From Squalus acanthias (taxonomy: Eukaryota): 64,000 bases of DNA. Under the pieces are notes generated by a model. That model worked only from the letters and a program-made list of their open reading frames with translations, was not told the DNA's origin and made no database searches. The stretch lies in contig CM059429.1 of assembly GCA_030390025.1 (NCBI GenBank), forward strand, positions 145,328,001 to 145,392,000, written 5' to 3'. Both the position numbers and the translations under genes were made by a program. Below are positions 42,926-61,084 of the stretch, piece by piece. Each line of letters opens with the position of its first letter. Positions within the stretch are counted from its first letter, which is position 1.

Positions 42926-43186
42926 TTCTCAGAAATAAATCATTTTAAATGGACTTGCAATCTGTCTCACTCCAATATTGCTTCAATGTTGACGGCCCTG
43001 ATGTTGTCTGGGTAGAAAAACAACACCGACAACATGCTTTTAAAGATGAAAATTAAGTGTTAAAGATAGATGGTTGAAATACACTAAATCAGCAGATCTT
43101 CACTGCTAAGTGTAAGGAAATCTACTGGACGGTTACTTATCAAAGTTCATTGTTTCCTTTTCTATATTTTCAGAACTCGTCAAATA

Positions 43187-43250
43187 ATGTTACTGCTGGG
43201 AAATCAAGGAGTCCAGATTCCTATTTTACTGCATATCCTTCTCAGTGCAG
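43187..43250 (+). CDS. IgSF receptor, leader exon
   Basis: MLLLGNQGVQIPILLHILLSA; pyrimidine tract + CAG acceptor at 43173; CAG/GTAAG donor in phase 1, compatible with the V exon. Confidence 0.75.
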
Positions 43251-43857
43251 GTAAGGGAGCTTACAATGTCTTCTTCTAATTCACATTAGAAAGTTACAAA
43301 AATATTCCCCTATTTTTTACATGACACAATACATGTCCAAATCTTGAAACCTAATAAGGTTCTAATTCTCCAAATCCATGGTCTTCGTTCTCTCCCTCCC
43401 CGACCTGCCTTCTCTGATTGTCATTTTTACAGCTGGCTGATTGATGAAGAATCCTCACTTCTCCTCCTCCCCCACCCGCCATTGTTGCATTGTAGCTGGT
43501 TTTGGGGTGCAGGGTTTTTATCCCATTAATTGTTGTTTTATAACTGACTACTTAAACATTTTCAGTTGAAATGGAGGCTCCATCAGAAATATTGAACTGA
43601 CTTTCTCTTTCAGATGCTGATTAACACATTGTGTACTTACAGCATTCTCTGCTTTAATTTCAAGTTTTCAGTATGGTTGTCTTTTCTTTTTATCGCATCT
43701 GCAAAATAATTTAAAATGCAGACTGCAATATTACTCATGCTTGTTTGTGGTGCTGTTGAGAGAAATTGCTACAAAAGCAGACTCTACTGGTGCTGTAGCT
43801 GTTTAAACATATTAAAAATATGAAATGAGGAAAAACACATTTGGCCCATGAACCCAT

Positions 43858-44005
43858 TCCAGAGCTGTTATCTTTCGGATGAGACATTAAACTGAGGCCC
43901 CCGTCTGCCCTCTCAGGTGGACGAAAAAGATTCCATGGCACTATTCGAAGAAGGGCATGGGAGTTCTCCCTGGTGTCCTGGCCATTTATTTATCCCTCAA
44001 CCAAC
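43858..44005 (+). mobile_element. Deu-domain SINE (SacSINE1-like), 5' part; 3' part resumes at ~46115-46280
   Basis: TCTTTCGGATGAGACATTAAACTGAGGCCCCGTCTGCCCTCTCAGGTGGA Deu core; split by a CR1 and a MITE. Confidence 0.75.
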
Positions 44006-44007
44006 TA

Positions 44008-45405
44008 TACTCCTAGTAACTACAGGCCGGTCAGTTTAACATCAGTGGTGGGTAAAGTTTTAGAAACAATAATCAAGGGAAAAAATTAATGGGCACTTGG
44101 AAAGGTTTAAGCTAATTAAGGAGAGCCAACACGGGTTTGTAAAAGGCAGATCATGTTTGACTAATCTAATTGAATTTTTTGATGAAGTAACAGGGAGGAT
44201 TGATGAAGGGAATGCAATGGATGTTGTCTACATGGATTTTAGGAAGGTGTTTGACAAAGTACCACATAGAAGACTGATTAACAAAATTGAGGCTCATGGA
44301 ATAGGTGGGTCAGTGGCAGCTTGAATAAGGAATTGGCTTAAGGACAGAAAACAGCGAGTTGTGGTAAATGGCTGTTTTTCAGACTGGAGGATGGTAGACA
44401 GTGGTGTTCCCCAAGGGTCAGTGCTAGGGCCACTATTTTTTTTGATAAAATGACCTGGATATTGGAATACAGAGTAGAATTTCTAAATTTGTTGATGACA
44501 CCAAACTTGGGGGTGTGGCAAACAGTGAGGATGATACCAATCGACTGCAAGGGGACATAAAAAGGCTAGCAAAATGGGCAGACAAGTGGCAGATGGAATT
44601 TAATACAGAGATGTGTGAGGTGATACATTTTGGCAGAAGGAATAGGGAGAGGCAATATACACTTAATGGCACAGTTTTACAGCGTGTGCAGGGACAGAGA
44701 GACCTGGGAGTTAATGTGCATAGGTCCCTGAAGGTGGCAGAACATATTGAGAGAGTGGTCAGCAAAGCATATGGGGTCTTGGGCTTCATAAATAGAGGTA
44801 TTGAGTACAAAAGTAGAGAAGTTATGCTGAACCTTTATAAAGCACTTGTTAGGTCGCAACTGGAGTATTGCGTCCAGTTCTGGTCACCACACTTTAAGAA
44901 GGATGTGAAGGCCTTTGAGAGGGTGCAGAGGAGATTTACCAGAATGGTTCCGGGGATGGGGGAATCTTAGCTACAAGGACAAGTTGGAGAAGCTGGATTT
45001 GTTTTCATTAGAGCAAAGGAGGTTGAGGGGTGATTTGATAGAGGTGTACAAGATTATGACTGGTTTGGATAGGCTAGACGGGGAAAGGCTGATCCCACTA
45101 TTTGATGGTACAAGGACTAGGGAACATAGATTTAAGATTTTGGGCAAGAGATACAGGGGGGATGTGAGGAAAAACTTTTTTATGCAGCGATGGTGAGGAC
45201 CTGGAACTCGCTGCCGACGGAAGTGGTGGAAATGGATACACTCAATGTTTTCAAGGGGAGACTGGATAGACACTTGAGGGAAATAAACTTGCAGGGATAT
45301 GGGGATAGAGCGTGGGAATGGGACTGACTGGATTGCTCTACAGAGAGCTGGCACGGACTCGATGGGCCGAATGGCCTCCTTCTGTGCTGTTATGACTGTA
45401 TGACT
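44008..45405 (+). mobile_element. CR1 RT 3' fragment (intronic)
   Basis: YRPVSLTS, QHGF, QLEYCVQFWSP motifs; TATGACT-type tail. Confidence 0.9.
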
Positions 45406-45406
45406 T

Positions 45407-46102
45407 AAAAATTCGGTTGCTTTGCACCTCCTGTTAACGGGGCGCAAAGCAACTATTGCCTGGGCGCGGCGCCGCCAACACCTCCCACGAAATTCAGCGG
45501 GAGGTTAGCGGCGGCGGTAACCATTAGCACCCCGCGGCGCTGCGCCACCAGCGATAACATAATCGCCATGTGCAGCGCCCCGGCCGCGATCTCCGGGAGC
45601 GCCCCGACTTACCGCCGGACGCTATGTCCAACTGGGTCACGGGGGCCTACCTGCGGCCGGGGTGGCGCAAATTAAAGGGGAGGTGCAGGGCAGCCATTTT
45701 TGTTGCTGGCCACTTGCCAGCACCTGCCCCTGTTGCCGTCCCCGGCCTCCTCTGCAGCCTCCCGGCGGAGTGCCGGCTGCGTTCCGTGAGCCCGGCACTT
45801 CTCAAGTGTCGGGCTCTTTTGCCGGCACTCCGAACCCTGGTGGCCCAGCTGGGCCCCAGGTCACGCTGCGCTGGGCCCCTCCCCTTTAAGAAGGGGAGGA
45901 AGGCCTGCAGTACCATGGCGCTGCGGCACATCGCGCCGCAATATTCACTCGCAGCACCCCGAGAGAGAGGCGGGGTGCTTGCAGTAGCACCCCGCTTCCC
46001 TCTTGGGGCGCTACCGGTGAATTTTGGCCGTGGGGGGCGCTAATTTTTTCGGGCTCCGGTGAAGTTAGCGCCGCAAAGGGGGCGCGACTCAATTTTTCCC
46101 CC
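45407..46102. mobile_element. GC-rich Harbinger-type MITE, longer relative of 32948-33071
   Basis: Shared ends AAAATT(C/G)GGTTGCTTTGC... and ...AAAGGGGGCGCGA..AATTTTTCCCCC. Confidence 0.7.
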
Positions 46103-47648
46103 TTTGACTCTATGACTAAAAACAGATCATCTGCTCATTATCTCATTGCTGTTTGTGGGACCTTGCTGTAGGTAAATTGTCTGCCGCATTTCCTTCATTA
46201 CAACAGTACTTCAATGGCTGGAAAGCACTTTGGGACGCCCTGAGGTTGTGAAAGGCACTATATAAATTCAAGTTTGTTCTTTGACTATCTGGTGGCAATC
46301 ATATAAATATAGAGTTCATTAGGGAGTGTACAGTGCAATTTAAAATTTCCTTTGGAAATGCACATGTGCTGTTTCTGTTAAATTTATAGTGGCTGATTTC
46401 CATTACTAATGTGTGGTTCAGAACTGGTGCAAATTGCAACAGAATTGCCATTTTAATAGCCCTCAAATTTTGCATGATTATTGACAGCTCCAGGTACAGA
46501 TTTGAGCATGTGCAGGGAGCATAAAATCACATTTGTAATATAATTCATACATTATAAAGAAAGAATTTGCACTTATACAGTGACGTACCGTGTCTCTCAG
46601 AAATGTTGCAAAGCACGACATATAGAATGAATTCTTGTGCAATTATTTTTTTATGGTTAAATGTGGCTGTAATTTTGCACACAGCAAGTTTCCGGAATCA
46701 GCAGAGATGAATGACCAATTAATCCGATTGTTTTGGTGGCGGTTATGAGTGGGTGCACAAAAAAATCGGATTATCACAATTGCAGAGAAATTCTTCTGGT
46801 AAACTGAGAATAGACAAAATATAAGTAACTTAAATCACTGAGAGAGCTTTCTTAAATGGATTTTCTAATCATTGAAAGTTTCATTTTCTAAATAAAAGCA
46901 TTCCGTGAATTTGGTGCTTTGTAGTGTGATGTTTTAATGCGACAAGCAGGACTTCTAGGTACACAGTACAATGGCCCACTAGGGTTGTACCCCTGTACCA
47001 TAGTGTAAGGTTATACAACACTCCATGGGTTATACTGATGGATTCATTTGGGGAGATTTTAACACTGCTCTCCCGACGGAAACAGGGTGGGCTGGCAGTT
47101 AAACTCGCCCATGGGACTTACCTGCCGAGATCCCGCTGTCTTCACGCGGGTTCCGATTTTAACCTGCTTTTCTGAGCCGGCGAGAGACACACTTGTGGCG
47201 GGATCCTTCTTTAAATATGCAGATCGGGTTCTGATGATGTTGTTAAGGTCCGAATGCGATTTTAACCAGAAGCCGTTGTGGCTTTCTCGCCAGGCCAACC
47301 TACCAGGAAGAGTAGGGGACAGAGGAGGCCCAAAAAGCTAAGTCTTTTTCATTTTTTTGACTTTCCTTGTGGGACCAGGAGGAGCAGGAGTTCTCCTGCT
47401 TTCCTGAACTTCCAAGGCCATTTTGGGCACTTCAGTACCTGATTTCCAGAATATTAGAATATGCTGCTCTCTCTTAGCAAACAAAACATAGAATCAGCAG
47501 TGTGTAAATACTGGAGTGGAGCGATTATCACCAAAATGAACTGAACCTAGATTTTAAATGGGTTGATCAGTGATGTGTCAGCAGGGTGATGGGTTATTAA
47601 CGTTGCATTATCTACACAAACTAATTAATGTTTTTTTTTTGCCCCAAG

Positions 47649-48011
47649 GAAAAAGCCAAAGGCTGACAGTTTCCCAGACGCCATCTGTGATCAAAGCACT
47701 AAAAGGACAGACAGTGAAAATAAACTGTTCGCACAGCAATGAAAACGGAGAACAGTTGAGGATTAAATGGAGAAAAAGTGACAGCACACAAGAGCTTTGC
47801 GATTATACTTACAATAAAAATGAAACAAAATATACATTATGGCATTGTTTAGAACGTGCTAACATTACAATGAACCTCTCAACAAACTCATCTTTAATAC
47901 TCTACGATCTACATGTAAATGACTCTGACATTTACTTCTGTCAGACTTCTATTGAAATACCTCCCCCTACACAAACAGCAGAAGGTACCGGCACGCACCT
48001 AACAGTGGAAG
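47649..48011 (+). CDS. IgSF receptor, germline-joined VJ-type V-set exon (CD28/CTLA-4/CD28H/NKp30-like)
   Basis: 363-nt phase 1-1 exon with AG/GT ends. VSQTP, KINC, IKW, extra ELC...C pair, DSDIYFC, IEIPPP, GTGTHLTV. Confidence 0.92.
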
Positions 48012-48454
48012 GTGAGTTTAACTTAGTGATGGCCCATAATGGAAGCTGACACCAAAATTGGAAAGAAGTACTTGCTCCTACATTACAACAGTGACTACAC
48101 GTCGAAAAGGACTTTGTTGGCTGTAAAGCACTTTGGGACGTCCTGAGATCTTGAAAGGCGCTAGATAAATGCAAGTCCTTTCTTTTTTTAGATGACACCA
48201 AGCTTAGGTTTTTAAACCATGCAGGTTGTAAGAAGAGAAGACTGACAGGAGGTGTTTCCTTCCTGGGAGTGAGTTGTATCCATGAAATGGAAAAAAACCA
48301 AAAAAGCTGATTGAGAATTTGAAGGCTAGAAGTGTGAAAAGGATGGCTTATCTTTTTTCTTCTCAGTAAGTGTGGGAGAGATGCTGGAAGAGCCTCCTGA
48401 GCTATGAGGGCAGGTGTTCAGGTTTAGAATAGACTTAGACTTTTGTTATGCTTG

Positions 48455-49070
48455 GGGGTGAAATTGATCTTGGGCGGTAGTGCAAAATAAGCAATGACAA
48501 ATTGACAGCCCGTTTTACACACCGCCCATTTATTTTAGGAAAGCACTGGGTGGAGCGTGCACAAGGCATGTTCTGCCCAGTATCAACTGGTGGGCCAGCT
48601 GAAGAGAAAAGAAAGACTTGCATTTATATAGCGCCTTTCACAACCTCAGGATGACCCAAAGCACATTACAGCCAAAGAAGTAATGAATAATAATAAGCAA
48701 TGAAGGGGAGGTGACAGCTAAGTTGGTGTTCATTTTTACGTGGGTGGGAGGAGCAGAAGTGTTCCTCTGGGCTCCATAGCACCAGCCTGGGCGGCTGCTG
48801 TTCCTGATTCACCCCGCCCCGCCCGCCTTTCCCTTCCTGAGATCGCCCTTCTTCTCCACAGACCTATCTTTCCTGGCCCGGAGGCCACCCAATATTGCAG
48901 TGGACCGGAGCTGGCGGGATGCCCAGGGGGTGTTCATTTTGTGCCCGAAGCCCGCCAGCCAAATGCTAACGAGACCCGACCCTCAAAATGTGCCGGGAGT
49001 ATCGGATGACAGGCTGGCACTCTCCGCCACTGGCTGCCCAAAGTCCGCTCAGAGTGAAAATCTACCCCTA
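48455..49070. mobile_element. Probable MITE with embedded SINE piece
   Basis: GGGGGTGAAATTG...AAAATCTACCCC-like termini, GC-rich interior. Confidence 0.4.
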
Positions 49071-49179
49071 AGTTTCTTGGAGGCAGCTTTTGCATTCAAG
49101 GAAATCAGGGAGTTCCATTTGAGGTTAGAGGAGATAGTGAATGCCAATAGAGGAAGGAAGGAAATTTATGCAGTGCTTT

Positions 49180-49550
49180 ATATTGTCCCAAAGTGCTTCA
49201 CATCCAATGGATAACTTTTTGAAGTGTGGTCACTGTTGCACATAGGCAAATACGGCAGACAAGTTACGCACAGCAAGATCCCACAAACGACAAATGAGTT
49301 GAGTGACCAGTTAATTATTTTTTGATGGTATTATTTGAGGGAGAAATGTTGGCCAGGATACCAGAATAATTTACTGTTCTGCTTTACATAGTACCATGGG
49401 ATTTTTACATCCACCTGAATAGGCAGACAGGGCCTTGGCTGCGCCTCTGACATTGCAGTACCCCCTCAGTAGTGCATTGACATCTCAGACTATAACTATG
49501 CGGTCAAGTCCTAGAGTGGGATTTAAATGCACAATCTTTTGACTCAAAAG
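49180..49550 (-). mobile_element. Diverged Deu-domain SINE
   Basis: Similarity to 53728-54180. Confidence 0.65.
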
Positions 49551-51193
49551 TGAGTGATAGGACTAAAGATGGTGCCATCAAAGGTAAGAACTAATGATTT
49601 GTTGGACTTTCACAATTCAAGAGTTCTATATATTTATAACACTTTTAATTTTATACTGTTTCTACTTCGCAGTCAGCATTTTCTCAGTATGTTTCATTAA
49701 CAGAACTTATAAGGACAGGAAGCATACACTGGACAATCTATTCCTGCATCTTGAATAAACAGCAGAATGTTTCAAAAACAATTTTTTTCTCAGTATCAGT
49801 AGATTTTTGATATGCTGATAATGGAATATATTGTTTCATATAAGAATCTAAAGCCCCACGTACTCAATTGGGGGAAGAGGAAACACGGCAGCCATTTTGT
49901 GCATGTAGTGCTCGTGTAGTCTGCTGCTGTTTTGGTCATTATTATACTTTATGATCAGATTATTGTGCAAAATGATAGAGCTCCTTTCAACTGAACTAAA
50001 TCTAACTGTAACTAAAATAAACCAACATGTGCTGATACATCAGGCTGTTAACATTAACTGTTAACTGTATCCTCATTAAAAGTAATGGCAACATAAAGAT
50101 GAACTCAGATTTTGACCTGGATTCACAGTTACTCCCATCAGTAACATGGTTACAGCTACTTCAACAAGAATGAGTGTCCCCTTCCCCTGAATTAACCGCG
50201 ATCCTTACAGGAGGTCCAAATCATTTTAGAAATCTGCTTTGGTTATTTATTAGATTTGACAACTACTTGGATGAATCCATATGAATAGTTATTGTAATTT
50301 AATCCAAAGATTGTTCTCTGAGGTTGTTATTTTTCACTTCCCACCCTCCAAAAAGGCAGATTAACTTTGTGCCTTGTGCCTGTTGTATTTTACCCACAAA
50401 GTGTTAAGGATAATTTTTTTTAATTTTTATCCATAATTAAATCAAATATATTTAAATCTCTCAGGCCTAAAACAACTTTCAGGAGAATCCAAGTATAGAA
50501 ACACTTCAATTAAATTACAGAGCAGGAGGCTGCTCCCAACAGTGTCCTGGGTGACAACTTCCAAACCAACATCTAACACAACCTGGCTGGTTTGTTTTTA
50601 ATTTTTTGTTTTAGAAAGTAAGGAGACAGATTTGAAGATGCTGAGACAGAACCAGTGTCCATTCCAATCATAGCCTTGGTCCTGGTGTTGGTCCTCATCT
50701 TGATACCTCCTTTACTAAACTGCTTCAAGGAAACCAGCAATTCCAGTCACCCACCACCAGCAACACATGTGGGTGAAAGAGTGCAGAGGCCTGAGGGGCA
50801 AGAAGAATCAGGGGCATTCAGGCTGGGAGCAAACAGGAGTAGGGTGTGTTGGGCTATGGTCTGGGAGGAAACAGATGGCCTAGGACATGGGCCAAGGCCT
50901 TGGAAGAAACAAGTGGGATGGGAGTGAGCCAGTCAGACCTAGTATCTGATAATGGGGCAGACGGCATGGGAGATTTAGATGAATGCCTGGGGAATTTAGT
51001 GCAGCCTATTCCAATTTTCTTATTTCTGAAGTTGGCTTGTTAATACAGGTCTCACAGTAAAGCATAATGTAACTTTAATTAAACAGTTCCTAAATCTCAC
51101 AAAGTAACAATTGAAGAAGCAGTGGAAAAAAATGACAGGCAGTGTGAACAATGGAAATAGAAGGTCTAATAACCTGTCACAATTGATTTTCAG

Positions 51194-51499
51194 CTCATCC
51201 AACAGTCCAGTTAAGAGCAGAGACTCTGCCTTACCCTAATGAAGGTGTACAGCTAGTCTGCTCATCACTGGAGTTCTATCCTGGCAGCATTCAAGTGTCC
51301 TGGTTTAAAGATGGACAGTTAATCATCAATGGGTCTGAGAATGGGACTCTTTACACTAACAGTGACGGCTCATTCTCCATCACAAGTTTCCTGAATCTTT
51401 CTGGATTTGAGTGGAATGAAAGTGGAAATTATTCCTGTCAGGTGAACCACTCGACACTGTCTGCACCCATCACTGAACGGATTTCTGTTAGTAACCAAG
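51194..51499 (+). CDS. IgSF receptor, C1-set exon
   Basis: 306-nt phase 1-1 exon; LVC, FYP, VSWFKDG, NSDGSFS, YSCQVNH (Ig/MHC C1 signature). Confidence 0.92.
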
Positions 51500-52800
51500 G
51501 TAAGAACAGCTGTGTGTTCTATTGTACAGATGTTATTAAATATAATACCTTTCTAGTAAAATACATGACATTGATTGAAGACTTGATGCTTTAACTGCTG
51601 ATTAGCGTCACTGAACAGCATTCTTTATCTGTTTTTTTTGGTGCTGGGTGAAAGAAAAATGATTATCAAGACAACTGGCAAACTCCCTGCTCTTCTTTGA
51701 ATAGTGTCATGAGACCTTTAATGTCCACCAGAGCAGGGGCTGTGGTTTAATGTCTCATCTAAAGATTGACATCAGCTCCCTCGCTGAAGTGTCAGCCTAG
51801 ATTGTGCGCTCAGGTCCTGCAGAGTGCGCTACCAACTGAGTCAAGCTGACATCCATAAAATCAATTCTTTGTATAATTTCCAAAATATTCTAAAAAAAAT
51901 TATATGCCGCAAGGAGGAAGTAAAAGGGCTTCCTCAGCATTGCTCTCAAGGAAAGCAAAATAATGCTAACTTTGTGTTCAAAATTCAAATGAACTACAAG
52001 CAGAAGACAGCCATCCACACAGATCCAAGCCTTGACATCACATTTTCATAATATCGAATCTGAACCTTAGATACATTTTCAAATCTCAATTATTTCGAAA
52101 CATTGAACTTCTAATCTAAACACTGCCAGTGGAGATCCAATCTCAATCCCAAAAATCCAATTCCAAATGTATACAGCTGCAGAAAAATGAGTTTTTCTTT
52201 ATGTTTACACCACAAATCTTATTGTTTACATGTTTCTTTTTTCTTTCATTTCCTTCTATTTTAATTTTTGCTTTCTTTCTCTCAGTCATTTTTATTTTGT
52301 TTCATTTCTTTATTCACTATTTTTCTTCTCACTTTCTGTGCCCAAGATAACTATGCAGGTCTGCCCTTTGTAGTTTAAGTACCATCCTCCTACCACTAGG
52401 AGATGCTGACACAATTTACAATTATGCGAAAGCAGGTGTCAATTTTGAGTGACGATAAATGGGGCAGCAACTGCTACAGATGTGGAAAGGATTGGAAACA
52501 GCAGAATTAAATAGATACTTTTACACATCAGTTGGTGCATTTTTAGTTTGACCCACATGAAAGTTTGGAGAACTTAAACAACAGATAATGGCCAATAAAG
52601 AATTACGACAATTGTAAGTATAGCTTTAGAGTGAAGAAAATAAAACTTAATTATACCCATAATTTCAGCAGCCAGATGTATGTGTTATGGTTAAAAAAAA
52701 ATCTCCATTAAAGTCAATGTGCTGATAATGAAACAGTGTTATATCAATGTCTGCCTATTGGTGGATAGTCATGTGATGCTTTATCAATAACTCTTCACAG

Positions 52801-52901
52801 ATAATAACAGTAATACATGGGCAATAGTACTAAGAGTCGCTATCCTTGCTGTGGCAACAATGATTGGGATGGCAGCATTTATTTTATATTTCAGACTTCA
52901 T
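52801..52901 (+). CDS. IgSF receptor, transmembrane exon
   Basis: CTCTTCACAG acceptor, GTAAGT donor; DNNSNTWAIVLRVAILAVATMIGMAAFILYFRLH, phase 1 to phase 0. Confidence 0.85.
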
Positions 52902-53727
52902 GTAAGTACTCTGATTTATTGTCATTTTATGAAATATGTGGTGTTGCTGGGTCAGTAGATTTCTTCCAGGACCAGTGGGCACTGCATGGAATTTTAACTT
53001 ATACTATTTTAAATTAATTTATTTAATTTTTGCTTTAAAAATAATAGCTCAGACATGCCAAATCCCTCCCCCAGGTTTTTTTTTTGTGGTGTTGCATCTT
53101 TAAGGGGAGATATTTGTTTATATTCCATTGGGATTAGGTTCTCCTAACCCCACAAATTCACCAGCCTACTTAAAATAGGATGTGTGCTCTCTATATATCT
53201 GGTCGCTGGCGATGGGATGAATGACCCCAGGTATGAAAAGCATCCCTATTCTCCCGTAAGAAATAATTCACCATACTGAATAACATCTTCAAAAGTGAAC
53301 TGGATCAATATCTAGTCATAAAATGTAGAATACAATTAGCCATCCTAGAATTATGTTGTGTATTATAGCATTAGATAGTGTTTTGGGGCTTGTCCTTCTT
53401 TGATATTTTGTGGGTGGTTATTATTTCATCAGGAGATTAAACAAACTAGAGAAAGCCCATGATAATGTCAATTGTACCCAATGGAACATCTTTTGATACC
53501 TGAATGGCCTTTTTATCATTTTGTTCTTTGCGAGGTATATATTCCTCCATTCGCTAAAATTAGTGAAAAAGTCATGCGAGTATGTGATGAAACCTACTCT
53601 AAAATCAATAACCTTTTTGATAAAATTAGCAAACAGAGGAAAGTATATCCCATTTGTTCATACATGCTTAATTTATAATCTTTGATTGTAGAGGATGTTC
53701 AGAATTCCAAATAAAGAATTAACTTTA

Positions 53728-54180
53728 GCATTTATATAGCACCTTTCAAGACCTCAGGATGTCTCAAAGCACTTTACAGCCAATTAAGTACTTTTGTAGT
53801 GTAGTCTCTGTTGCAATGTAGAAAACGTGGCAGCCAATTTGCTCACAGCAAGGTCCCACAAACAGCAACGAGATAGTGACCAGATAATCTGTTTTAGTGA
53901 TGTTGGTTGAGGGATAAATATTGACCAAGACACTGAGAGAAATCTCGTTCTCTTCTTTGAATAGAGTTGTGGGATCTTTTACGTCCACCTGAGAGAACAG
54001 ATGGCGCCTTGGTTTAACGTCTCATCCGAAAGACGGCACCTCTAATAGTGCAGCACTCCCTCAGTACTGCACTGGAGTGTCAGCCTAGATTATATGCTCA
54101 GGTCTCTAGAAAGGTGCTTGAACCCATGAACTTCTGATTCAGAGGTGAGACTGCTTCCACTGACCCAAGGCTGACCCCTA
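53728..54180 (-). mobile_element. Near full-length Deu-domain SINE (SacSINE1-like)
   Basis: tRNA-like head near 54110-54180, Deu core, 3' tail. Further partial copies at ~46560-46740, 48070-48180, 51680-51850, 54387-54560, 60060-60340, 60665-60720. Confidence 0.8.
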
Positions 54181-54822
54181 ATAAACAAGAGAGAGATAAC
54201 AAACCCATTTTCCCAGGACAGATCTATTCTTGTACAAGTTTTCATAACTACCATTTTGATTATTGTCCCAGGTAACTTCTGCTCTAAAATAGACACTCAT
54301 TGTAAAAACAAAGGATGACTCTTCACATAGTTAATGGACCATAATTTGATGTAGCAGGGCATCTGACAGCGTCTGCTATTAGTTACACTTGCATTTATAT
54401 AGCACCTTTTACAATGTCAGCACGTCCCAAAGTGCTTTACAGCCAATGAAGTACTTTTTGAAGTGTAGCCACTGTTGTAATGTAGGAAATGTGGCAGCCA
54501 ATTTGCACACAGCAAGGTCCCACAAACAGCAATGTGATAATGACCAGATAATCTGTCATTATCTGATTCGCTGTGGAGCAGCCCAAGTCTCTGAGGCTAC
54601 AGTGGTGTCAGCCATGTAGGTAAAGGTATTAAAGGAGATGAAAGTGGATGGAGGCCTGCTCTTTATTTATTTAATTTCCCTGAAAGAGGATAATTAGAGG
54701 CCTGCAGGAGTAAGAATCAAAGTCTGCTGCGGGATGTTAGGGCTGGATTTTGCTGGCGCTCAGAGGACGGGTTTGGAGGCGGGTCAGCTGTCAAAATAGC
54801 AAAGATCCGACAGCGGGTAGAA

Positions 54823-55981
54823 ATGGGTACGGTTTACACTCTCTCACCTTGGTCCTCAGAATCTGACTACGAAGAGCCCCAACACCAGCAGAACCAGGCA
54901 CCCCAGCAGCAACAGCAACAGCGACAACCTTCTCCTCAATCACCTGATGCTGCACAGGGCAAAGATCATCAGCGCAGGGCTGCATCACATCGCAGGAGAT
55001 ACCCCCAACACAGGGTTTACAGGCCGAGGACGAGCTTCCTCAACATGACATGGCGAACATTTGCAGATTGCTGGAGCAAGAGCTGCAGCTCAGAAGACCC
55101 CTTACCAGTAGCTGTGAAAGTCATCCTTGTCCTCAACTTCTTCGCCTCATGCTCCTTCCAGGCATCTGCAGCAGACATTTGCGGCATCTTGCAGTCGGCT
55201 GCCCACAGATGCATTACGCAGGTGACCGATGCCCTATTTGACAAGTCAGCAAATTATATAAACTTTGCCACTGATGAAGCCAGTGCTGCTGAGCACGCGG
55301 TTGGCTTGCGGCTCTGGCTGGATTCCCACGAGTGCAGGGCGTCATTGACTTCACACATGTGGCCATCAGGGCACCCCATCATAACCCAGCAGTGTTTATC
55401 AACCGCAAGGGCTTCCACTCCCTCAATGTGCAGCTTGTCTGCAACCACAGGAAGATCATTGTCCATGTGTGTGCCAGGTTCCCTGGGAGCTGCCATGACA
55501 CCTACATCCTGCGCCAGTCCACCATCCCTCAGCTCTTCAGACCTCCAGTGTTTCCGGCTGGCTGCTTGGCGACAAGGACTATCCATTAAAGACGTGGCTC
55601 GTGACACCTTTGAGGAGGACAACAAACGATGCTGAGGAACATTACAATCAAAGCCTCATCTGCACCAAAAGTGTCATAGAGCAAACAATAGGCATGCTGA
55701 AAACGTGCTTCAGATGCCTGGACAGATCGGGAGGAGCCCTGCAGTACACACCAGCCAGGGTCTCCAGCGCCCTGCACAACATAGCGCAGCAGCAAGGATT
55801 AGCGATACAGGAGGAAGAAGGTGCAGAGCGCACAGCCACTTCGGAGGAGGACGACGATGATGAGTTTGAATATGAGGATGATGAAGACCTTGAGCAGCCG
55901 CCAGTACCAATGCCACCAGTACATGACCACACTGCTGCCCATGAGGCCAGGAATCACCTCATCATGGCCAGATTTAGTTAA
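54823..55981 (+). pseudogene. Harbinger DDE transposase (HARBI1-like), frameshifted
   Basis: [52 protein letters not shown]. Confidence 0.9.
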
Positions 55982-56174
55982 GTTCATGCAAAAAAGACAT
56001 GTGGCTGCCACATTGGCATCAGACCACATCAACGCCATTAACCACTTCCAAGTGTCAACACACATTTGCCAAGAACCACAAAGTTCACGCATGTAAAGGT
56101 TTAATGGACAAAATCACTAACAGAAACTTGTCCATAACATTGAAAGAAACACCCAAGTGACTAGCCTTGTGATT

Positions 56175-58053
56175 CTATTTGTGTGGCATCTTTCCTTTCC
56201 GCGTGCTTCTACGTGGTGCAACCCCTGTGGCTTCAGCAGAGGTAGAGGCAGCCTGCTCACTTCCGTGCTGCATATGCTTAGACGCCTTTGGCTGTCGTCC
56301 TCTGGGTTTTGGAGCCTGTGTGGGCCCCGCCAAAGTGTGCTCCTCCTGCGACTGTGCAGTGGCAGACTCGGCCCATCGCTGTCCGTGGAGGCATCTGGGG
56401 CGCTGACTGAGGGGTAGGCAAGGGGTTTGAAATGTGAGCGCTTGGAGAGGAGCCCCACTTGCATGTGCCCTCCCACCATCATCCCTCCCATAGGTCACCT
56501 GCACTTCTCTGCTAGAAAGTAGCTGGAGAGCACCTTGCTGCACCTCAGTGGGGCCATGAGGACCCATGTCGATGTTGACATTCCTCCTCGCAAGGACGTC
56601 TATGAGCCTTTGGTTTCTCTTCTCAATAGATGTCCATCTATTTTGAATTGAGATCATGTGCTCAAGCGACTGGCACATTATGTTCTCCATGCAGGTTGCC
56701 ATCCTATCTAAGGAGGAAACAACGGTCGCAAGTGCATGCGCCACGGTGTTGGCCATGCTTGAGATGGACTCCTCCATTCTCTGCACACTCGCAGTCACCG
56801 CGGTTGCAAAACCTGTCAGAGCTTCCTACACTTGTTGCTCCAGCTCCAGGACCGCCCTCTTTCTCGATGGCCCCCAAGGCTCAGCTTCCACATGCAGCTG
56901 CGCAGAGCGAGGAGACTCCTGCGCCCTCCAGCAAGGAGTCTCCACTGCTGTCCCTGTCTCCACCATCTCCTCTTGCTCACTTGTGACTTGTGAGACACCA
57001 GGTGACAACATTACTCTATCTCACGTACGACCCACTGAGGTGTGCGTATCTGCGCTAGTGCTGGCTTGCCTTGTCAGAGGTGATGCTGCGCCCTCAAAGG
57101 CTGGAGCCTCCTCTGAGGAGTCCTCTTGATGTTCCTCATGGCCATTGGGGGTGGGGGGGCTCTTGATGGACCTGTGGGAGAGTAAAGACATCAGTTAGAT
57201 AAATGATATGTCCAGTGCATATAGATACCATTATGCACATTATGAGCAATCAATTCCTGTTGACATCAGCCCTAATATGAGTGACTGATGAATGACATGT
57301 AGGTGTATGGAAAATGATTCTGTCACCAGGTTGTTCTGATGAGCCCCTCTCTCCGTCCCCCACTTCCGGCTGATCCACCGCTCCAGTAATCTCCAGGGCA
57401 GCCTCCTCTGCAAGAGTCAAAATGGCCAGTGATTGAGGCTACCTCCCGTTCTCCCCTTGTTGTGGGCTCTCTTCTCCTGCAAGGAGGGAAAGAAGAGGTT
57501 GCGTGAGAGTGATGAAATGAGTGTAATGAATGGATGTGTTAGATCTTTATAGGGAAACTATAATGGAGGGGGGTGGATGTAACAAGTTGCCTCCTTTAGT
57601 GTTGCTAGCTGGCGTCATTACATTAGGATGAGGGTGAGTGTTCGGGGTGCATAGTAAGATGGGTATGCAGTAATGTAGCTAGAGAGGGATAGCTGAAGGT
57701 GTAAGGGATGTTGCATTGAGTTGCACTGTGCAGGAGTAGGGTTGGGAATGCTGAGTGATGGGGAAGTGATAACAGACACAGAAGTATGAAGGTAAGTGTG
57801 GCTTTATACTCACTTTTCCAGATCGTAGAAGATCATGAAAACACTTGCGGCACTGAACCCAGGTCCTCATCACCACACACCTGCCCGTTACCTCCTCAGT
57901 TATTTGCAGCCAGGCTGCCTTGGTCTGCTGGGGTGGTCTCTTCCAACCACTGGCAGGGAAGAGAACCTCCCTGCGTGCTCTGACTCCCTCCACAAGAACA
58001 TGGAGGGAGTCATTACTGAATCGAGGTGCAGCCCTCTGCCTTTGTGAGCTCAT
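56175..58053 (-). pseudogene. Harbinger Myb/SANT (trihelix) DNA-binding gene, three exons (58053-57814, 57476-57327, 57171-56175)
   Basis: APRFSNDSL..LVEGV...AWLQI...RTWVQCRKCFHDL; GT/AG sites visible; small frameshifts. Confidence 0.85.
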
Positions 58054-58402
58054 TTTTGGAGTTGAACAAGCTATCTCAGCAATGGTCGTTTCAAATTCAG
58101 GAAGTGGAATAAAGAGAGGCCATGGGCCCTTTAAATAAACCGGCAAGAGAAGCGTCAGCGCTGACGTCACCTAACCCGCACTTTCAAATAGGGTCGGGGA
58201 ACGTGACGGGCGGGCTTAGCAAGGCCCATTAACATAAAATCCTTTTTTTCGGTGGGCTTCAGTAGGCAGCAGGACCATATCCCGACAACGACCTCTCCCG
58301 CCCTGAACCCGCCTCGGCCGGCAAAATCATGATCTTAGAGTGGGTTGGAGCAGAGAGGATCTGGCCACGCTATTGGAACCAGCAACCAGCAAATATGGCT
58401 AT

Positions 58403-59467
58403 TATCTGCTTTTTTTAAATCACTTCCTCTCCAGGTCCAAGCACCCAGCCTATGCTCAGCTTCCCTCTGACAGCTATCTGAAACTCTGGAGCCCTCTGTA
58501 TAAGGGCCTGTATTCACACCACTCCACACCAGGCTCAGTGCATTAATATATTACCAAGCTGTCCACAATTTCACATAAGTACATTAAGGAGGTCGGGGGA
58601 GAAGGGAAAGGGGAGGAAGAAGAGATGGGGAGTGAGGAGGGGGTGAGAAAAGGGATAAGGAGTAGAGGATGGGGAAAGGGGAGAAGGGAAGAGGATCAGG
58701 AGTGGGGCAGAAGATGGGGTAAAAGAGATAGTCAAAAGAAAAGATGGAACTCAAAATGAATTGAACACTGTAAACCTCTATACAGTCGTTAGGATAATTC
58801 TTGATCCTACTATAAACATCTGGTAGCAGCATTGCAGGTGCCTGGAGAGATCAGGGGACATATTACAGTGCAACCTGGCCTGAATCTCAAAGGTTATTGT
58901 TGTCTACTGCATGCTTCACAACTTTACTATTCAGACAGGCCTAACAATGGAGATGGAGGTGGTCAATGGCCACCAGAAGACATCTCGACTGAAAGATGTT
59001 CACAGACAGGAAAAGTTAAACAAGAGGCTATCACAGATAAGACCTTCACCTGTGCCTGAACCACCCAATGCAATGTGGATATCTCACCCAAAGTCATGAA
59101 GTTCAGTCTGGGACCTAATTTTAATCAATATGCAAGATTAACAAGGCTCATGCTTGCCTGTAGCATAGCCTCATTCTGTCCCTCAAAATTGACCATTGCA
59201 AATGGCAGCATGCAATGATTCAGGCATGCAGGGTCATGCACCTAGTGTAACATCCCAAGCCCTTCACCAATTGTGTCTCCAAAAAATCAGGGTTACTATC
59301 TGCTTTTTTAAAATCACTTCCTCTCCAGGTCCAAGCACCCAGCCTATGCTCAGCTTCCCTCTGACAGCTATCTGAAACTCTGGAGCCCTCTGTATAAGGG
59401 CCTGTATTCACACCACTCCACACCAGGCTCAGTGCAATATATTACCAAGCTGTCCACAATTTCACAT
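58403..59467 (+). repeat. Near-identical direct repeat, 58403-58576 and 59297-59467
   Basis: 174/171-bp copies 894 bp apart, differing mainly by a 3-bp indel. Confidence 0.92.
58935..59099 (+). CDS. Candidate cytoplasmic/terminal exon of the IgSF receptor (one of several)
   Basis: TTTACTATTCAG acceptor; phase-0 frame open for 54 codons (TGLTMEMEVVNGHQK...HPKS*). Alternatives at 53433-53462 and 59506-59640. Confidence 0.3.
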   Translation, partial: TGLTMEMEVVNGHQKTSRLKDVHRQEKLNKRLSQIRPSPVPEPPNAMWISHPKS

Positions 59468-61084
59468 TTCTATAATCAATCATCTGACATGTTCCTCATT
59501 TCTAGGATATTGATGATGAATTTGAACCAACTTCCCTGTGCCAAGTGAAAAAACATCAACAGTTACAAACAAAACTCATTAAAGCAACAAGTGCCAGGAA
59601 ACAGGGCCTTGAGGTCCACAGCAGTCTAATTGGGAAATAAGGTTACAATTTTGGTGTTTCCAACTTAACATAAGCATACTTTACAGTACTTGTATGATTT
59701 ATCTTACTTCCACTGGAAACTTGTCTGCAGACAAAGCTGATTGCTCGTGATCAAAACGTGAACCTTCATTTATATTATTCACAGATTCTTTTGAATCACT
59801 ATTGTGGCCAGACTGCTATTCATTTTTGTTTTTCACCATAAGCTGTTCATTGTGTTCTAGAGGTAACAGATGTCAATTTGAGAGACTGGGCACCCTACAC
59901 TTTATTTCAATAAAGGAACAAAATTCTGTGTGATATGCTTGCTGGAGAAGCTCAGCCAACTCGGATTCATATATAATCCTATTGCACCACCTGACTCATC
60001 CTGCAATTTACAGATTTTTATTTTTAAGGGTGTAAGTGTGGCAGGGGGCAGTTTGGGACTTTCACGACCTCAGGACGTCCCAAAGCACTTTACAGGCAAT
60101 GAAGTACTTTTGAAGTGTAATCGCTGTTATAATGTAGGAAATGTGGCAGCCAATTTGCGCACAGCAAGCTCCCACAAACAATGTGATAATGACCAGATAA
60201 CCTGTTTTAGTGATGTTAGTTGAGGGATAAATATTGGCCAGGACACTGGGGAGAACTCCCCTGCTCTTCTTCAAAATAGTGCCATGGGATCTTTTACATC
60301 CACCCAAGAGGGCAGATGGAGCCTCGGTTTAATGTCTCATACTAAACCACTAATATTACGTTATTGACAGGTGAATTTGTCAATAACTCATGGAACATTT
60401 TGAATGGCATGGCATCAGTTCTCTAAATCTATCCCCTGCAATGATTGGACATCAGGAAATGCATGGCCAGGGCTATAGGATGCTGCTGGGAAAATGCCCA
60501 AACCTCATAATGAACATATGCATTACACAAATAGGGAGCTGAATTGTATTAATACAAACAGATGCATTTGACATAAGGACACCAATGTCTTAATAGGGGT
60601 TGTTTCTGTGTTGAGAGTCACAAATATTTAAGCTGTATTGTCATACTGTAGATGGTTTAGAAAGAAAGACTTGAATTTATTTAGCGCCTTTCATGACCTC
60701 GGAACGTCCCAAAGTGCTTCATGAAATAGCCATTTAGAATAAGAAAAGACCTGCACAGCCGCCCTATGTAGTGTGGAAAGTAAGAGGCAGGCTTTGTGCT
60801 CTACGCTATCTCTGCAGTACCATTACAATTAGAACTGAGCTTACAGATATGTAGGAATTGTAACTGTTTAAACATAATTAATCGTGTTTCCATGTTCATT
60901 TTCTGGTGTGTGTATATTTTAAAAAGTAGTTTTTCTTAAGTCTATCCTTGTATAGCATTTGGATTGTCATATAATTACTAATACCCTGTAAACTGATTTA
61001 AAAAACAGCTCACCAATGTATAAAGATTAAAATTGATTTAAATTTACTAAAGTCTGAGGTCTTCATGAAGTTTTGTGCACTTCA

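What the first reader, a model, noticed from the sequence alone, without database searches (positions are those of the whole stretch)
43187..52901. Non-rearranging VJ-C1 receptor: CD28-family V domain on an antigen-receptor-type C1 domain
Seen: four exons (64+363+306+101 nt, phases 1,1,1,0) splice into an open 278-aa leader-V-C1-TM protein. The J-like G strand (GTGTHLTV) is in the same exon as V, and I saw no RSS beside it. The V has the extra ELC...C cysteine pair and IEIPPP loop that recall CD28/CTLA-4 (EVC...C, MYPPP) and CD28H/TMIGD2 (VEIP). Known: CD28-family and NKp30 receptors have a single V domain, whereas VJ+C1 is the Ig-light/TCR architecture; non-rearranging VJ-C1 genes (PRARP/VJC1 types) are discussed as relics of the pre-RAG antigen receptor. 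Inference: this may be an uncharacterised shark link between costimulatory/NK receptors and antigen receptors, possibly binding a B7-family ligand.
Basis: partly seen in the sequence, partly recalled or inferred. Interest (0 to 1): 0.85.

Follow-up and report, generated by a model that had tools for sequence, protein, structure and literature searches.

The report
Shark CD28-like V-C1 paired receptor
This is a real, intact shark gene for a cell-surface receptor that puts a CD28/CTLA-4-type binding domain on an antibody-type constant domain; it belongs to a conserved pair of genes that databases predict in many fishes and reptiles but that I could not find named or described in print.

Summary
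The four exons are there exactly as described, with AG/GT sites and phases 1,1,1,0. A fifth exon (59506-59640) adds 44 codons and the stop, giving 322 codons. There is no RSS. Contigs of RNA-like runs end at the exon borders, consistent with exon 1>2, 3>4 and 4>5 splicing. No listed piece bridges V>C1. That join rests on a Callorhinchus cDNA-derived protein and more than 20 gene models.

The V domain is of the CD28 family: it has the YxCQxxxEIPPP..GxG motif, its nearest kin outside its own family are single-V CD28-like proteins, and CTLA-4 takes 9 of the top 10 Foldseek rows. The C1 is closest to Ig constant domains and shark UrIg2.

Elasmobranchs carry two linked paralogues. Type A, which is this gene, has an Arg in the membrane span (8 of 8). 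Type B has an uncharged span and a C-terminal IYSLLGQ (YxxL) motif. V domains follow the type, whereas C1 exons are homogenised within each species. More distant V-C1 kin occur in sturgeon, gar, bowfin, turtles, tuatara and alligator, so this is not a shark-only gene.

I read it as a paired, non-rearranging receptor; the signalling and the ligand are inferred. The scan noted a second such gene 26.7 kb before this window (s1-887976). Eight literature searches found no description.

The parts
43187..43250 (+). Exon 1: start codon and signal peptide (21 codons + 1 nt, phase 1)
   Evidence: tblastn with the leaders of P0002 and P0003 hits 43172-43261 (E 4e-5 and 2e-4). An RNA-like contig (X2 record 9) carries 139 further letters upstream of exon 2.
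47649..48011 (+). Exon 2: V domain with the J-like G strand in the same exon. E-I-P-P-P is at 47954-47968. The extra Cys pair is C50/C66.
   Evidence: Pfam V-set 4.2e-14, ICOS V-set_2 1.1e-5. AF2 pLDDT 90.8. CTLA-4 fills 9 of the top 10 Foldseek rows. 78.5% identical to Pristiophorus P0001. Contigs X1 record 1 and X2 record 9 match with 0 differences.
51194..51499 (+). Exon 3: C1-set constant domain
   Evidence: Pfam C1-set 2.2e-18. By PDB sequence search it is nearest the lambda constant region (40.6 bits) and UrIg2 C1 (38.9 bits). Contig X2 record 15 ends its match at the exon end and runs on for 126 letters.
52801..52901 (+). Exon 4: short stalk and membrane span with Arg (AGA at 52833-52835), ending in phase 0
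   Evidence: The Arg is present in 8 of 8 type-A sequences that include this exon. Contig X2 record 16 covers 52799-52901 with 0 differences and has 20 and 30 extra letters at its two ends.
59506..59640 (+). Exon 5: cytoplasmic tail (44 codons, begins D-I-D-D-E-F-E-P) and the TAA stop. It has no tyrosine in this species.
   Evidence: tblastn of P0001 residues 392-436 gives E 1.2e-14 and 69% identity. The AG acceptor and reading frame are read. The same tail occurs in P0167, P0174 and P0002. An AATAAA lies at 59909. No RNA was laid here.

Best explanation
The window holds an intact, transcribed five-exon gene (43187-59640, + strand). It encodes a non-rearranging type-I membrane receptor: signal peptide, one CD28-family V domain with a built-in J-like strand, one Ig-type C1 domain, a membrane span with an Arg near its outer end, and a 47-residue tail without tyrosine. 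It is the 'type A' member of a pair of linked paralogues kept throughout elasmobranchs. 'Type B' has a different V, an almost identical C1, an uncharged span and a conserved C-terminal (V/A)IYSLLGQ motif. Shown here: the gene structure, its conservation, the two types, and the homogenisation of the C1 exon within species. Inferred: type A signals by pairing its Arg with an acidic residue of an ITAM adaptor (FcR-gamma/CD3-zeta/DAP12 kind). Also inferred: type B signals through its YxxL (ITIM-like in most sharks), and the V domains bind a B7-family-like ligand through the PPP loop, as CD28 and CTLA-4 do.
For: Structure.

No RSS.

Transcription: contigs of three small runs lie only on exons and stop at exon borders with extra letters beyond. 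They have zero depth in the seven bins 49953-51219, where a DNA run has depth 14-38.

V-C1 joined in relatives: the Callorhinchus protein NP_001279395/AFK11223 and 22 of 22 hits carry C1-set, 21 of them V-set as well. C1-set is found in 25 of 25 and V-set in 24 of 25 aligned members.

CD28-type V: the family V profile scores its own family at 103 bits or more, and the next hits are single-V CD28-like proteins at 75-60 bits. TMIGD2, CD28-like and CTLA-4-like names appear. Foldseek agrees. The nearest Atlas cluster is the PD-1 family.

Two types: the V tree separates A from B, each label needing 2 changes against a shuffled mean of 8-9. The C1 tree pairs A with B by species (99/98*, 100/98*, 100/99*, 100/100*), and the labels need 9 changes, no better than random. 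Identity between A and B within a species is 50-65% for V and 92-98% for C1.

Arg in the span: 8 of 8 type A against 1 of 10 type B.

Same chromosome: A and B share the contig length in 4 of 4 species that have a contig length for both.
Against: No listed contig bridges exon 2 to exon 3 in this species, and the runs are only guessed to be RNA. The type-A tail is 47 residues, longer than in many adaptor-dependent receptors, and has its own conserved DDEFEP motif of unknown role. Only 4 of 10 full type-B tails (5 of 12 counting P0006 and the fragment P0081) have the canonical residue at -2 of an ITIM. With acidic residues upstream, the motif could instead be a hemITAM. The V tree cannot place the family within the CD28 family (81/93 for the group, bootstrap not settled). 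By phmmer against solved structures, TCR V-beta scores as high as CD28 (30.4 vs 27.6 bits). No ligand, adaptor or tissue data exist.
Confidence: 0.7

Rival explanations
1. A and B chains pair through their near-identical C1 domains and GxG-bulged V domains. They would form a non-rearranging, antigen-receptor-like dimer (AB, or AA and BB) rather than acting as two separate opposing receptors.
For: C1 domains usually act as dimerisation modules (established knowledge of Ig, TCR and MHC). The C1 exon is kept 92-98% identical between A and B within species while V diverges. The two genes stay linked (lead s1-887976). The GxG motif is conserved.
Against: There is no conserved membrane-proximal Cys for an interchain bond. 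Gene conversion between tandem copies gives the same C1 pattern without any pairing. No multimer model could be made here. Callorhinchus shows only a B-like chain.
Confidence: 0.12
2. It is a member of the B7/butyrophilin ligand family (a V plus C1-like ectodomain), not a CD28-type receptor.
For: The whole-ectodomain model of the orthologue P0167 has B7-H6 as its first Foldseek row (E 2e-16, TMt 0.74). The CD80-like C2-set_2 profile matches 11 of 25 family members and the BTN3A2-like Ig-C profile matches 9 of 25.
Against: E-values across the 50 rows differ by less than tenfold, and the B7-H6 advantage reflects only the interdomain angle of a monomer model. The V alone matches CTLA-4, CD28 and PD-1. 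No B7 chain is among the 60 best sequence matches. C1-set scores far above C2-set_2 (2e-18 vs 4e-3).
Confidence: 0.06
3. It is merely a SIRP, tapasin-related or germline-joined Ig light-chain gene, as NCBI's automatic names say.
For: The names given by sources are 'kappa/lambda light chain-like', 'SIRP 1-like' and 'tapasin-related-like'. It shares the V-C1 order, and it shares the paired logic of SIRP-alpha/beta.
Against: The names disagree with each other across orthologues. It has one C1, not two. It has a membrane span and a tail, unlike a light chain. No SIRP or tapasin chain appears in the 60 best rows for V or C1. The nearest V domains are CD28-family ones.
Confidence: 0.05
4. The V exon and the C1-TM exons belong to different transcripts, for example a CD28-like V gene using another membrane exon such as the hydrophobic ORF at 50655-50927.
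For: No listed contig bridges 48011 to 51194. There is a hydrophobic ORF in the intron.
Against: RNA-like depth over 49953-51219 is zero. That ORF has no Pfam match. V, C1 and TM exons appear together at similar depth in the same runs (X2: 2.0, 3.2, 2.6; X3: 5.9, 9.9, 11). The V-C1 join is present in a cDNA-derived chimaera protein and in models from more than 15 species.
Confidence: 0.03

Closest known systems
CD28 family (CD28, CTLA-4, ICOS, CD28H/TMIGD2, CD28HL1-3, CD28X, PD-1), as set out in PMC11599192
   Same: V domain with Y-x-C-polar-xxx-E-I-P-P-P followed by GxG, and an extra Cys pair. CTLA-4, CD28 and PD-1 are among the best structural matches. Single-V family members are the nearest outsiders. 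It is a type-I membrane protein.
   Different: That paper states that every one of its nine members has a single extracellular V domain, whereas here a C1 domain follows the V. There is an Arg in the span. The type-A tail of this species has no YxN or YxxM motif. Synteny is unknown.
UrIg / UrIg2 (non-rearranging elasmobranch Ig-like genes; PMC12227049; PDB 9dmx)
   Same: It is a non-rearranging V with a J-like strand followed by C1. UrIg2 is the best profile match of the C1 (5.7e-45 over three domains; 38.9 bits for its C1 alone). It is found in sharks.
   Different: UrIg2 is V-C1-C2-C3 and antibody-like, and it is reported from elasmobranchs only. This gene has one C1, a membrane span with Arg and a CD28-type V, and it has kin in bony vertebrates.
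SIRP-alpha/SIRP-beta and other paired receptors (KIR, PIR, and NKp30 for the Arg) - features recalled, not tested here
   Same: The logic is the same: linked paralogues with related ectodomains, one carrying a tyrosine motif and the other a basic residue in the span. SIRP is also V plus C1.
   Different: SIRP has two C1 domains, and its V is not among the best matches. Here the stalk domain is homogenised and the V domains are kept apart, the reverse of the usual pattern.
PRARP (Fu et al. 2019, J Immunol; paper not held, recalled)
   Same: It is a non-rearranging VJ-type IgSF gene with a tyrosine motif, discussed as a relic of an antigen-receptor precursor (mentioned in PMC10751288 and PMC11599192).
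   Different: As I recall it, PRARP has a single V domain and no C1. No sequence of it was available for comparison.
Ig light chains and TCR chains
   Same: The V(J)-C1 order is the same, and so is the C1 type. NCBI names several orthologues 'light chain-like'.
   Different: This gene has no RSS and no separate J. It has a membrane span with a tail. The V is closer to the CD28 family.

Membership tests
CD28 family (definition of PMC11599192: domain structure, conserved motifs, synteny) | Single extracellular IgSF V domain | tested here: not met
   A C1-set exon (2.2e-18) follows the V exon. C1-set is found in 25 of 25 relatives.
CD28 family | CDR3-loop motif YxC...(E-I-)P-P-P followed by GxG | tested here: met
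   Y-F-C-Q-T-S-I-E-I-P-P-P-x5-G-T-G is read. PPP is at least 90% conserved. The motif definitions were read.
CD28 family | V domain groups with family members by sequence and fold | tested here: inconclusive
   The nearest outsiders are CD28-like single-V proteins, and CTLA-4 tops Foldseek. However, the tree support is weak (81/93) and TCR V-beta scores similarly by phmmer.
CD28 family | Tyrosine-based cytoplasmic motif (YxNx, YxxM, ITIM/ITSM) | tested here: not met
   The tail of this gene has no tyrosine. Type B paralogues do carry YxxL.
CD28 family | Conserved synteny block of a named member | not testable with these tools
Non-rearranging VJ-C1 IgSF genes | V and J-like strand in one exon, with no RSS | tested here: met
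Non-rearranging VJ-C1 IgSF genes | C1-set domain next to the V | tested here: met
Non-rearranging VJ-C1 IgSF genes | V-to-C1 splice in mRNA | tested here: inconclusive
   It was not seen in this species. It is present in the cDNA-derived Callorhinchus protein and in RefSeq models.
Paired activating/inhibitory receptors | Linked paralogues with related ectodomains | tested here: met
C1 is 92-98% identical within a species. For this genome there is only an unchecked note (s1-887976).
Paired activating/inhibitory receptors | One member has a basic residue in the span, the other a tyrosine motif | tested here: met
   Arg is present in 8 of 8 type A and 1 of 10 type B. YxxL is present in 10 of 10 full type-B tails.
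Paired activating/inhibitory receptors | Association with an ITAM adaptor, or recruitment of a phosphatase | not testable with these tools
   This needs cell experiments.
SIRP family | V-C1-C1 ectodomain with a SIRP-type V | tested here: not met
   There is one C1 only. No SIRP chain is in the best 60 rows.

The most novel reading that the evidence does not exclude
The A and B chains form a germline-encoded, TCR-like dimer. Two different CD28-type V domains would sit on matched C1 domains, and the Arg of one chain would recruit ITAM adaptors. Such a dimer would be a surviving example of the non-rearranging V-C1 receptor from which both the costimulatory receptors and the rearranging antigen receptors are thought to descend.
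Probability: 0.1. Interest if true: 0.9.

Novelty: new variant of a known kind. Interest (0 to 1): 0.62.

Why it matters
The most recent survey of the CD28 family that I could read (PMC11599192, 2024) lists nine members and states that all have a single V domain. This gene adds an old, widely kept branch in which the same kind of V sits on an Ig-type C1 domain. It comes as a linked pair with opposite-looking signalling parts. Three concrete questions follow:

- Did the CD28-type V and the antigen-receptor C1 share a gene before RAG?
- Why is the stalk, and not the binding domain, kept identical between the two paralogues?
- Which B7-like ligand, if any, do they see?

It also corrects misleading automatic names (light chain-like, SIRP-like, tapasin-related-like) on more than 20 database entries.

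Tried and rejected
A search with the V exon alone in the search for homologous proteins found nothing. This reflects its length window of 66-210 residues; the full-length kin came.

I looked for the type-B tail motif and for further V or C1 exons in the whole window and found none. The partner gene is therefore not within 43 kb upstream or 4 kb downstream.

At first I took the last 45 residues of P0001 for transposon read-through. I withdrew that when the same DDEFEP tail appeared in P0167, P0174 and P0002 and a clean acceptor was found at 59504-5. The middle part of P0001 still looks like read-through, but I did not test it.

The hydrophobic ORF at 50655-50927 was considered as an alternative membrane exon. 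I rejected it because it has zero RNA-like depth and no Pfam match.

PRARP identity could not be tested, because Fu 2019, Ohta 2019, Flajnik 2012 and Flajnik 2023 are not held and no source name says PRARP.

Eight literature searches gave no description of a CD28-like V on a C1. Subscription papers and all supplements, including the sequence sheets of PMC11599192, were out of reach and may hold one.

The wide V tree did not resolve a sister group. Five rows that I had labelled 'outgroup' grouped with non-outgroup rows. Three of them (P0033, P0090, P0145) sat inside the V-C1 group and turned out to be V-C1 proteins themselves. The other two (P0084, P0099) grouped with single-V proteins outside it.


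Full report
THE OBSERVATION. Reading 43000-53100 shows the four exons exactly as described. They are 43187-43250 (64 nt), 47649-48011 (363 nt), 51194-51499 (306 nt) and 52801-52901 (101 nt). Each is bounded by AG and GT, the phases are 1,1,1,0, and every frame is open. I kept to the rule of treating a spliced model exon by exon. The exons were translated and searched apart, and the joined protein was never built, searched or folded. Pfam calls exon 2 a V-set domain (4.2e-14, with the ICOS V-set_2 model at 1.1e-5, just under its cut-off) and exon 3 a C1-set domain (2.2e-18). The J-like strand G-T-G-T-H-L-T-V-E ends the V exon right at the donor site. No RSS-type heptamer lies between 43000 and 56741, and no heptamer-spacer-nonamer lies anywhere in the window.

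A FIFTH EXON. The frame is still open at 52901. tblastn with relatives found 59506-59637 (P0001 residues 392-436, E 1.2e-14, 69% identity). The sequence there has a pyrimidine tract and an AG at 59504-5, then 44 codons beginning D-I-D-D-E-F-E-P, then TAA at 59638-59640. An AATAAA lies at 59909. The same tail ends the models of Heterodontus (P0167), Chiloscyllium (P0174) and Stegostoma (P0002). The coding region is therefore 322 codons in five exons spanning 43187-59640. Intron 4 holds a decayed Harbinger-type transposon.

TRANSCRIPTION. One run search gave no run on record as RNA. It did give three small runs guessed to be RNA (X1 and X2 from two organisms, X3 from a third) and larger runs that behave as DNA. 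I laid X1-X4 on 47600-53000. X1 and X2 give exon pieces with 0 differences:
- X1 record 1 covers 47827-48010.
- X2 record 9 covers 47647-47773 and is preceded by 139 letters that lie elsewhere.
- X2 record 15 covers 51377-51501 and is followed by 126 further letters.
- X2 record 16 covers 52799-52901, with 20 letters before it and 30 after.

The two-letter overhangs fit the last bases of the preceding exon (AG), and the single mismatch of record 15 fits the first bases of exon 4. X3 gives the same exon-bounded pieces at about 8-13% divergence (records 17, 23, 24). All three runs have zero depth in the seven bins from 49953 to 51219, where the DNA-like run X4 has depth 14-38. These runs therefore behave as RNA and are consistent with exon 1>2, 3>4 and 4>5 splicing. 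No listed piece bridges exon 2 to exon 3. Most joints were crowded out of the listing by repeats (734 were not shown). The V>C1 join in this species is therefore inferred, not shown.

RELATIVES. A full HMMER scan with the V exon found 173 proteins at E<=0.001 and five at E<=1e-30. The best are uncharacterised proteins of Pristiophorus, Stegostoma, Carcharodon, Hemitrygon, Pristis, Amblyraja and Callorhinchus. All of them have the V followed directly by a C1 (Y-S-C-Q-V-N-H). One Callorhinchus member carries the accessions NP_001279395 and AFK11223. By accession type these derive from a cDNA, which is my inference from accession conventions. A search with a full-length ray protein gave 22 proteins from 16 named species, plus one unnamed Logan cluster. 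C1-set is present in 25 of 25 and V-set in 24 of 25 aligned members. NCBI's names for these orthologues contradict one another: kappa or lambda light chain-like, SIRP 1-like, tapasin-related-like, uncharacterised.

More distant V(PPP)-C1-TM-tail proteins occur in sturgeon, gar, sea turtles, tuatara and alligator. A second subfamily occurs in bamboo shark, bowfin, paddlefish and a cyprinid. In all, 28 of the 150 best V hits carry a C1-like domain. So this is an old gnathostome family, not a shark oddity.

TWO TYPES. The elasmobranch proteins fall into two kinds.
- Type A includes the window's gene. It has an Arg a few residues into the membrane span (the window plus 7 of 7 models that include that exon; three further models lack the exon). 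In sharks its tail is the DDEFEP tail.
- Type B has an uncharged span (9 of 10; Carcharodon has an Arg at the edge). Its tail ends (V/A)-I-Y-S-L-L-G-Q. YxxL is present in 10 of 10 full tails, but the residue at -2 fits the recalled ITIM consensus in only 4 of them.

On the V tree, A and B separate. Each label needs 2 changes, against 8-9 for shuffled labels, and the window's V is sister to Pristiophorus type A at 96/91*. On the C1 tree, A and B of one species are sisters (Pristiophorus 99/98*, Scyliorhinus 100/98*, Mustelus 100/99*, skates 100/100*). There the labels need 9 changes, no better than shuffled. In identities, A against B within a species is 50-65% for V but 92-98% for C1. The same type between Carcharodon and Scyliorhinus is 72-78% for V and 82-83% for C1. 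The C1 exon is thus homogenised within genomes while the V exons keep their separate identities. I could not read that DNA, so it is a lead only, but it fits the linked partner.

WHAT KIND OF V AND C1. The loop Y-F-C-Q-T-S-I-E-I-P-P-P fits the motif that Quiniou et al. give for CD28H and its paralogues. They call E-I-P-P-P, found in reptiles and chondrichthyans, possibly primordial. GxG follows, as in CTLA-4 (PMC11599192, sections 14-16 and 23 read).

A profile of the family's V scores its own members at 103 bits or more. Next come single-V proteins at 75-60 bits. These include proteins named CTLA-4-like, CD28-like and TMIGD2.

The AlphaFold model of the V exon (pLDDT 90.8) matches CTLA-4 in 9 of the first 10 Foldseek rows. 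CD28 is at rank 15, PD-1 at 29 and a TCR V-beta at 4. All E-values lie within about one order of magnitude. The nearest named Atlas cluster is a PD-1 family (a lead only).

Against a clean assignment stand two results. phmmer against solved chains gives TCR V-beta 30.4 bits, CD28 27.6 and CTLA-4 26.3. The 64-row V tree joins all V-C1 proteins with three single-V proteins only at 81/93, with an unsettled bootstrap, and TMIGD2 is left unresolved.

The C1 exon is closest to a lambda constant region (40.6 bits) and to the C1 of shark UrIg2 (38.9 bits). With a seven-row profile, UrIg2 is first. All 60 rows shown are Ig constant regions or UrIg2, and none is a TCR, MHC, beta-2-microglobulin, SIRP, tapasin or B7 chain. 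Multi-domain chains do gain from summed scores.

The model of the whole orthologue P0167 (pLDDT 84.5, helix 244-281) has B7-H6 as its first row (TMt 0.74) ahead of TCR, light chains and UrIg2. All lie at E about 1e-16. I take that as a match of the interdomain angle, not of kinship.

HOW IT LIKELY WORKS. Shown: an intact, conserved, apparently transcribed gene for a membrane protein with a CD28-type V, an Ig-type C1 and a basic residue in the span, partnered in other species by a YxxL-bearing paralogue. Inferred from established knowledge of paired receptors (recalled, not tested): the Arg pairs with an Asp of an ITAM adaptor and makes type A activating. Type B is inhibitory if its motif works as an ITIM, or activating if it works as a hemITAM. 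The PPP loop binds a B7-like ligand. The reversed pattern of homogenisation (stalk kept identical, binding domains kept apart) has no settled explanation. It could result from gene conversion confined to one exon. It could also mean that the C1 domains must match because the chains dimerise, and that is the bolder reading I keep at about one in ten.

COMPARISON AND NOVELTY. It works like a paired receptor, and its V looks like a CD28-family V. It nevertheless fails the family's stated defining feature of a single V domain, so I do not file it as a member. It shares the non-rearranging VJ-C1 idea with UrIg/UrIg2 but differs in domain number, membrane anchoring, V type and taxonomic range (abstract and passages of PMC12227049 read). 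PRARP is mentioned as a VJ gene in PMC10751288 (passages) and PMC11599192. The original paper was not held, and my recollection is that PRARP lacks a C1. Eight full-text searches found no description of this family. Several key subscription papers and all supplements were out of reach. I rate it a new variant of a known kind: predicted in databases, unnamed, and with an unreported architecture and pairing.

Noticed in passing
window 55332-55981 (+) and 57679-58170 (-): Intron 4 holds a decayed Harbinger/PIF-type DNA transposon. It has two out-of-frame DDE_Tnp_4 pieces (1.9e-14 and 6e-5) and a Myb/SANT-like ORF on the other strand (2.4e-9).
   Followed up: partly
window 50655-50927 (+): A 90-codon ORF starts with a strongly hydrophobic stretch and lies inside the V-C1 intron. 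It has no Pfam match and no RNA-like depth. It is probably chance or part of a repeat.
   Followed up: partly
window 48076-48190, 48604-48690, 49180-49410, 51580-51940, 53720-54180: Copies of a very abundant short repeat. They reach depths of thousands to millions in all four runs and dominate the joint and loose-end tables. This is why the exon junctions were not listed.
   Followed up: no
window 44097-45200 (+): A frame-shifted LINE reverse-transcriptase remnant lies in intron 1, judged by eye against the intact CR1-like ORF at 4524-6479. It is followed by a GC-rich stretch at 45400-46100 of unknown nature. The one ORF scanned had no Pfam hit.
   Followed up: no
P0001, P0002, P0003, P0169, P0171, P0004 (database models of type-A orthologues): The public gene models of type A are often wrong at the 3' end. 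They skip the membrane exon, read into the intron or run into transposon ORFs. This may be why the type-A form has gone unnoticed.
   Followed up: partly
P0152 and P0155 (Callorhinchus and Chiloscyllium isoforms): Predicted isoforms lack the membrane exon but keep the tail, which hints at soluble or alternatively spliced forms.
   Followed up: no
same genome, other pieces (notes s1-890145, s1-889389, s1-888231, s1-888611, s1-889400): The scan's first readers list several 'VJ-C1-TM-ITIM' genes embedded in Ig light-chain clusters of this genome. Whether they are related to this family is not known.
   Followed up: no
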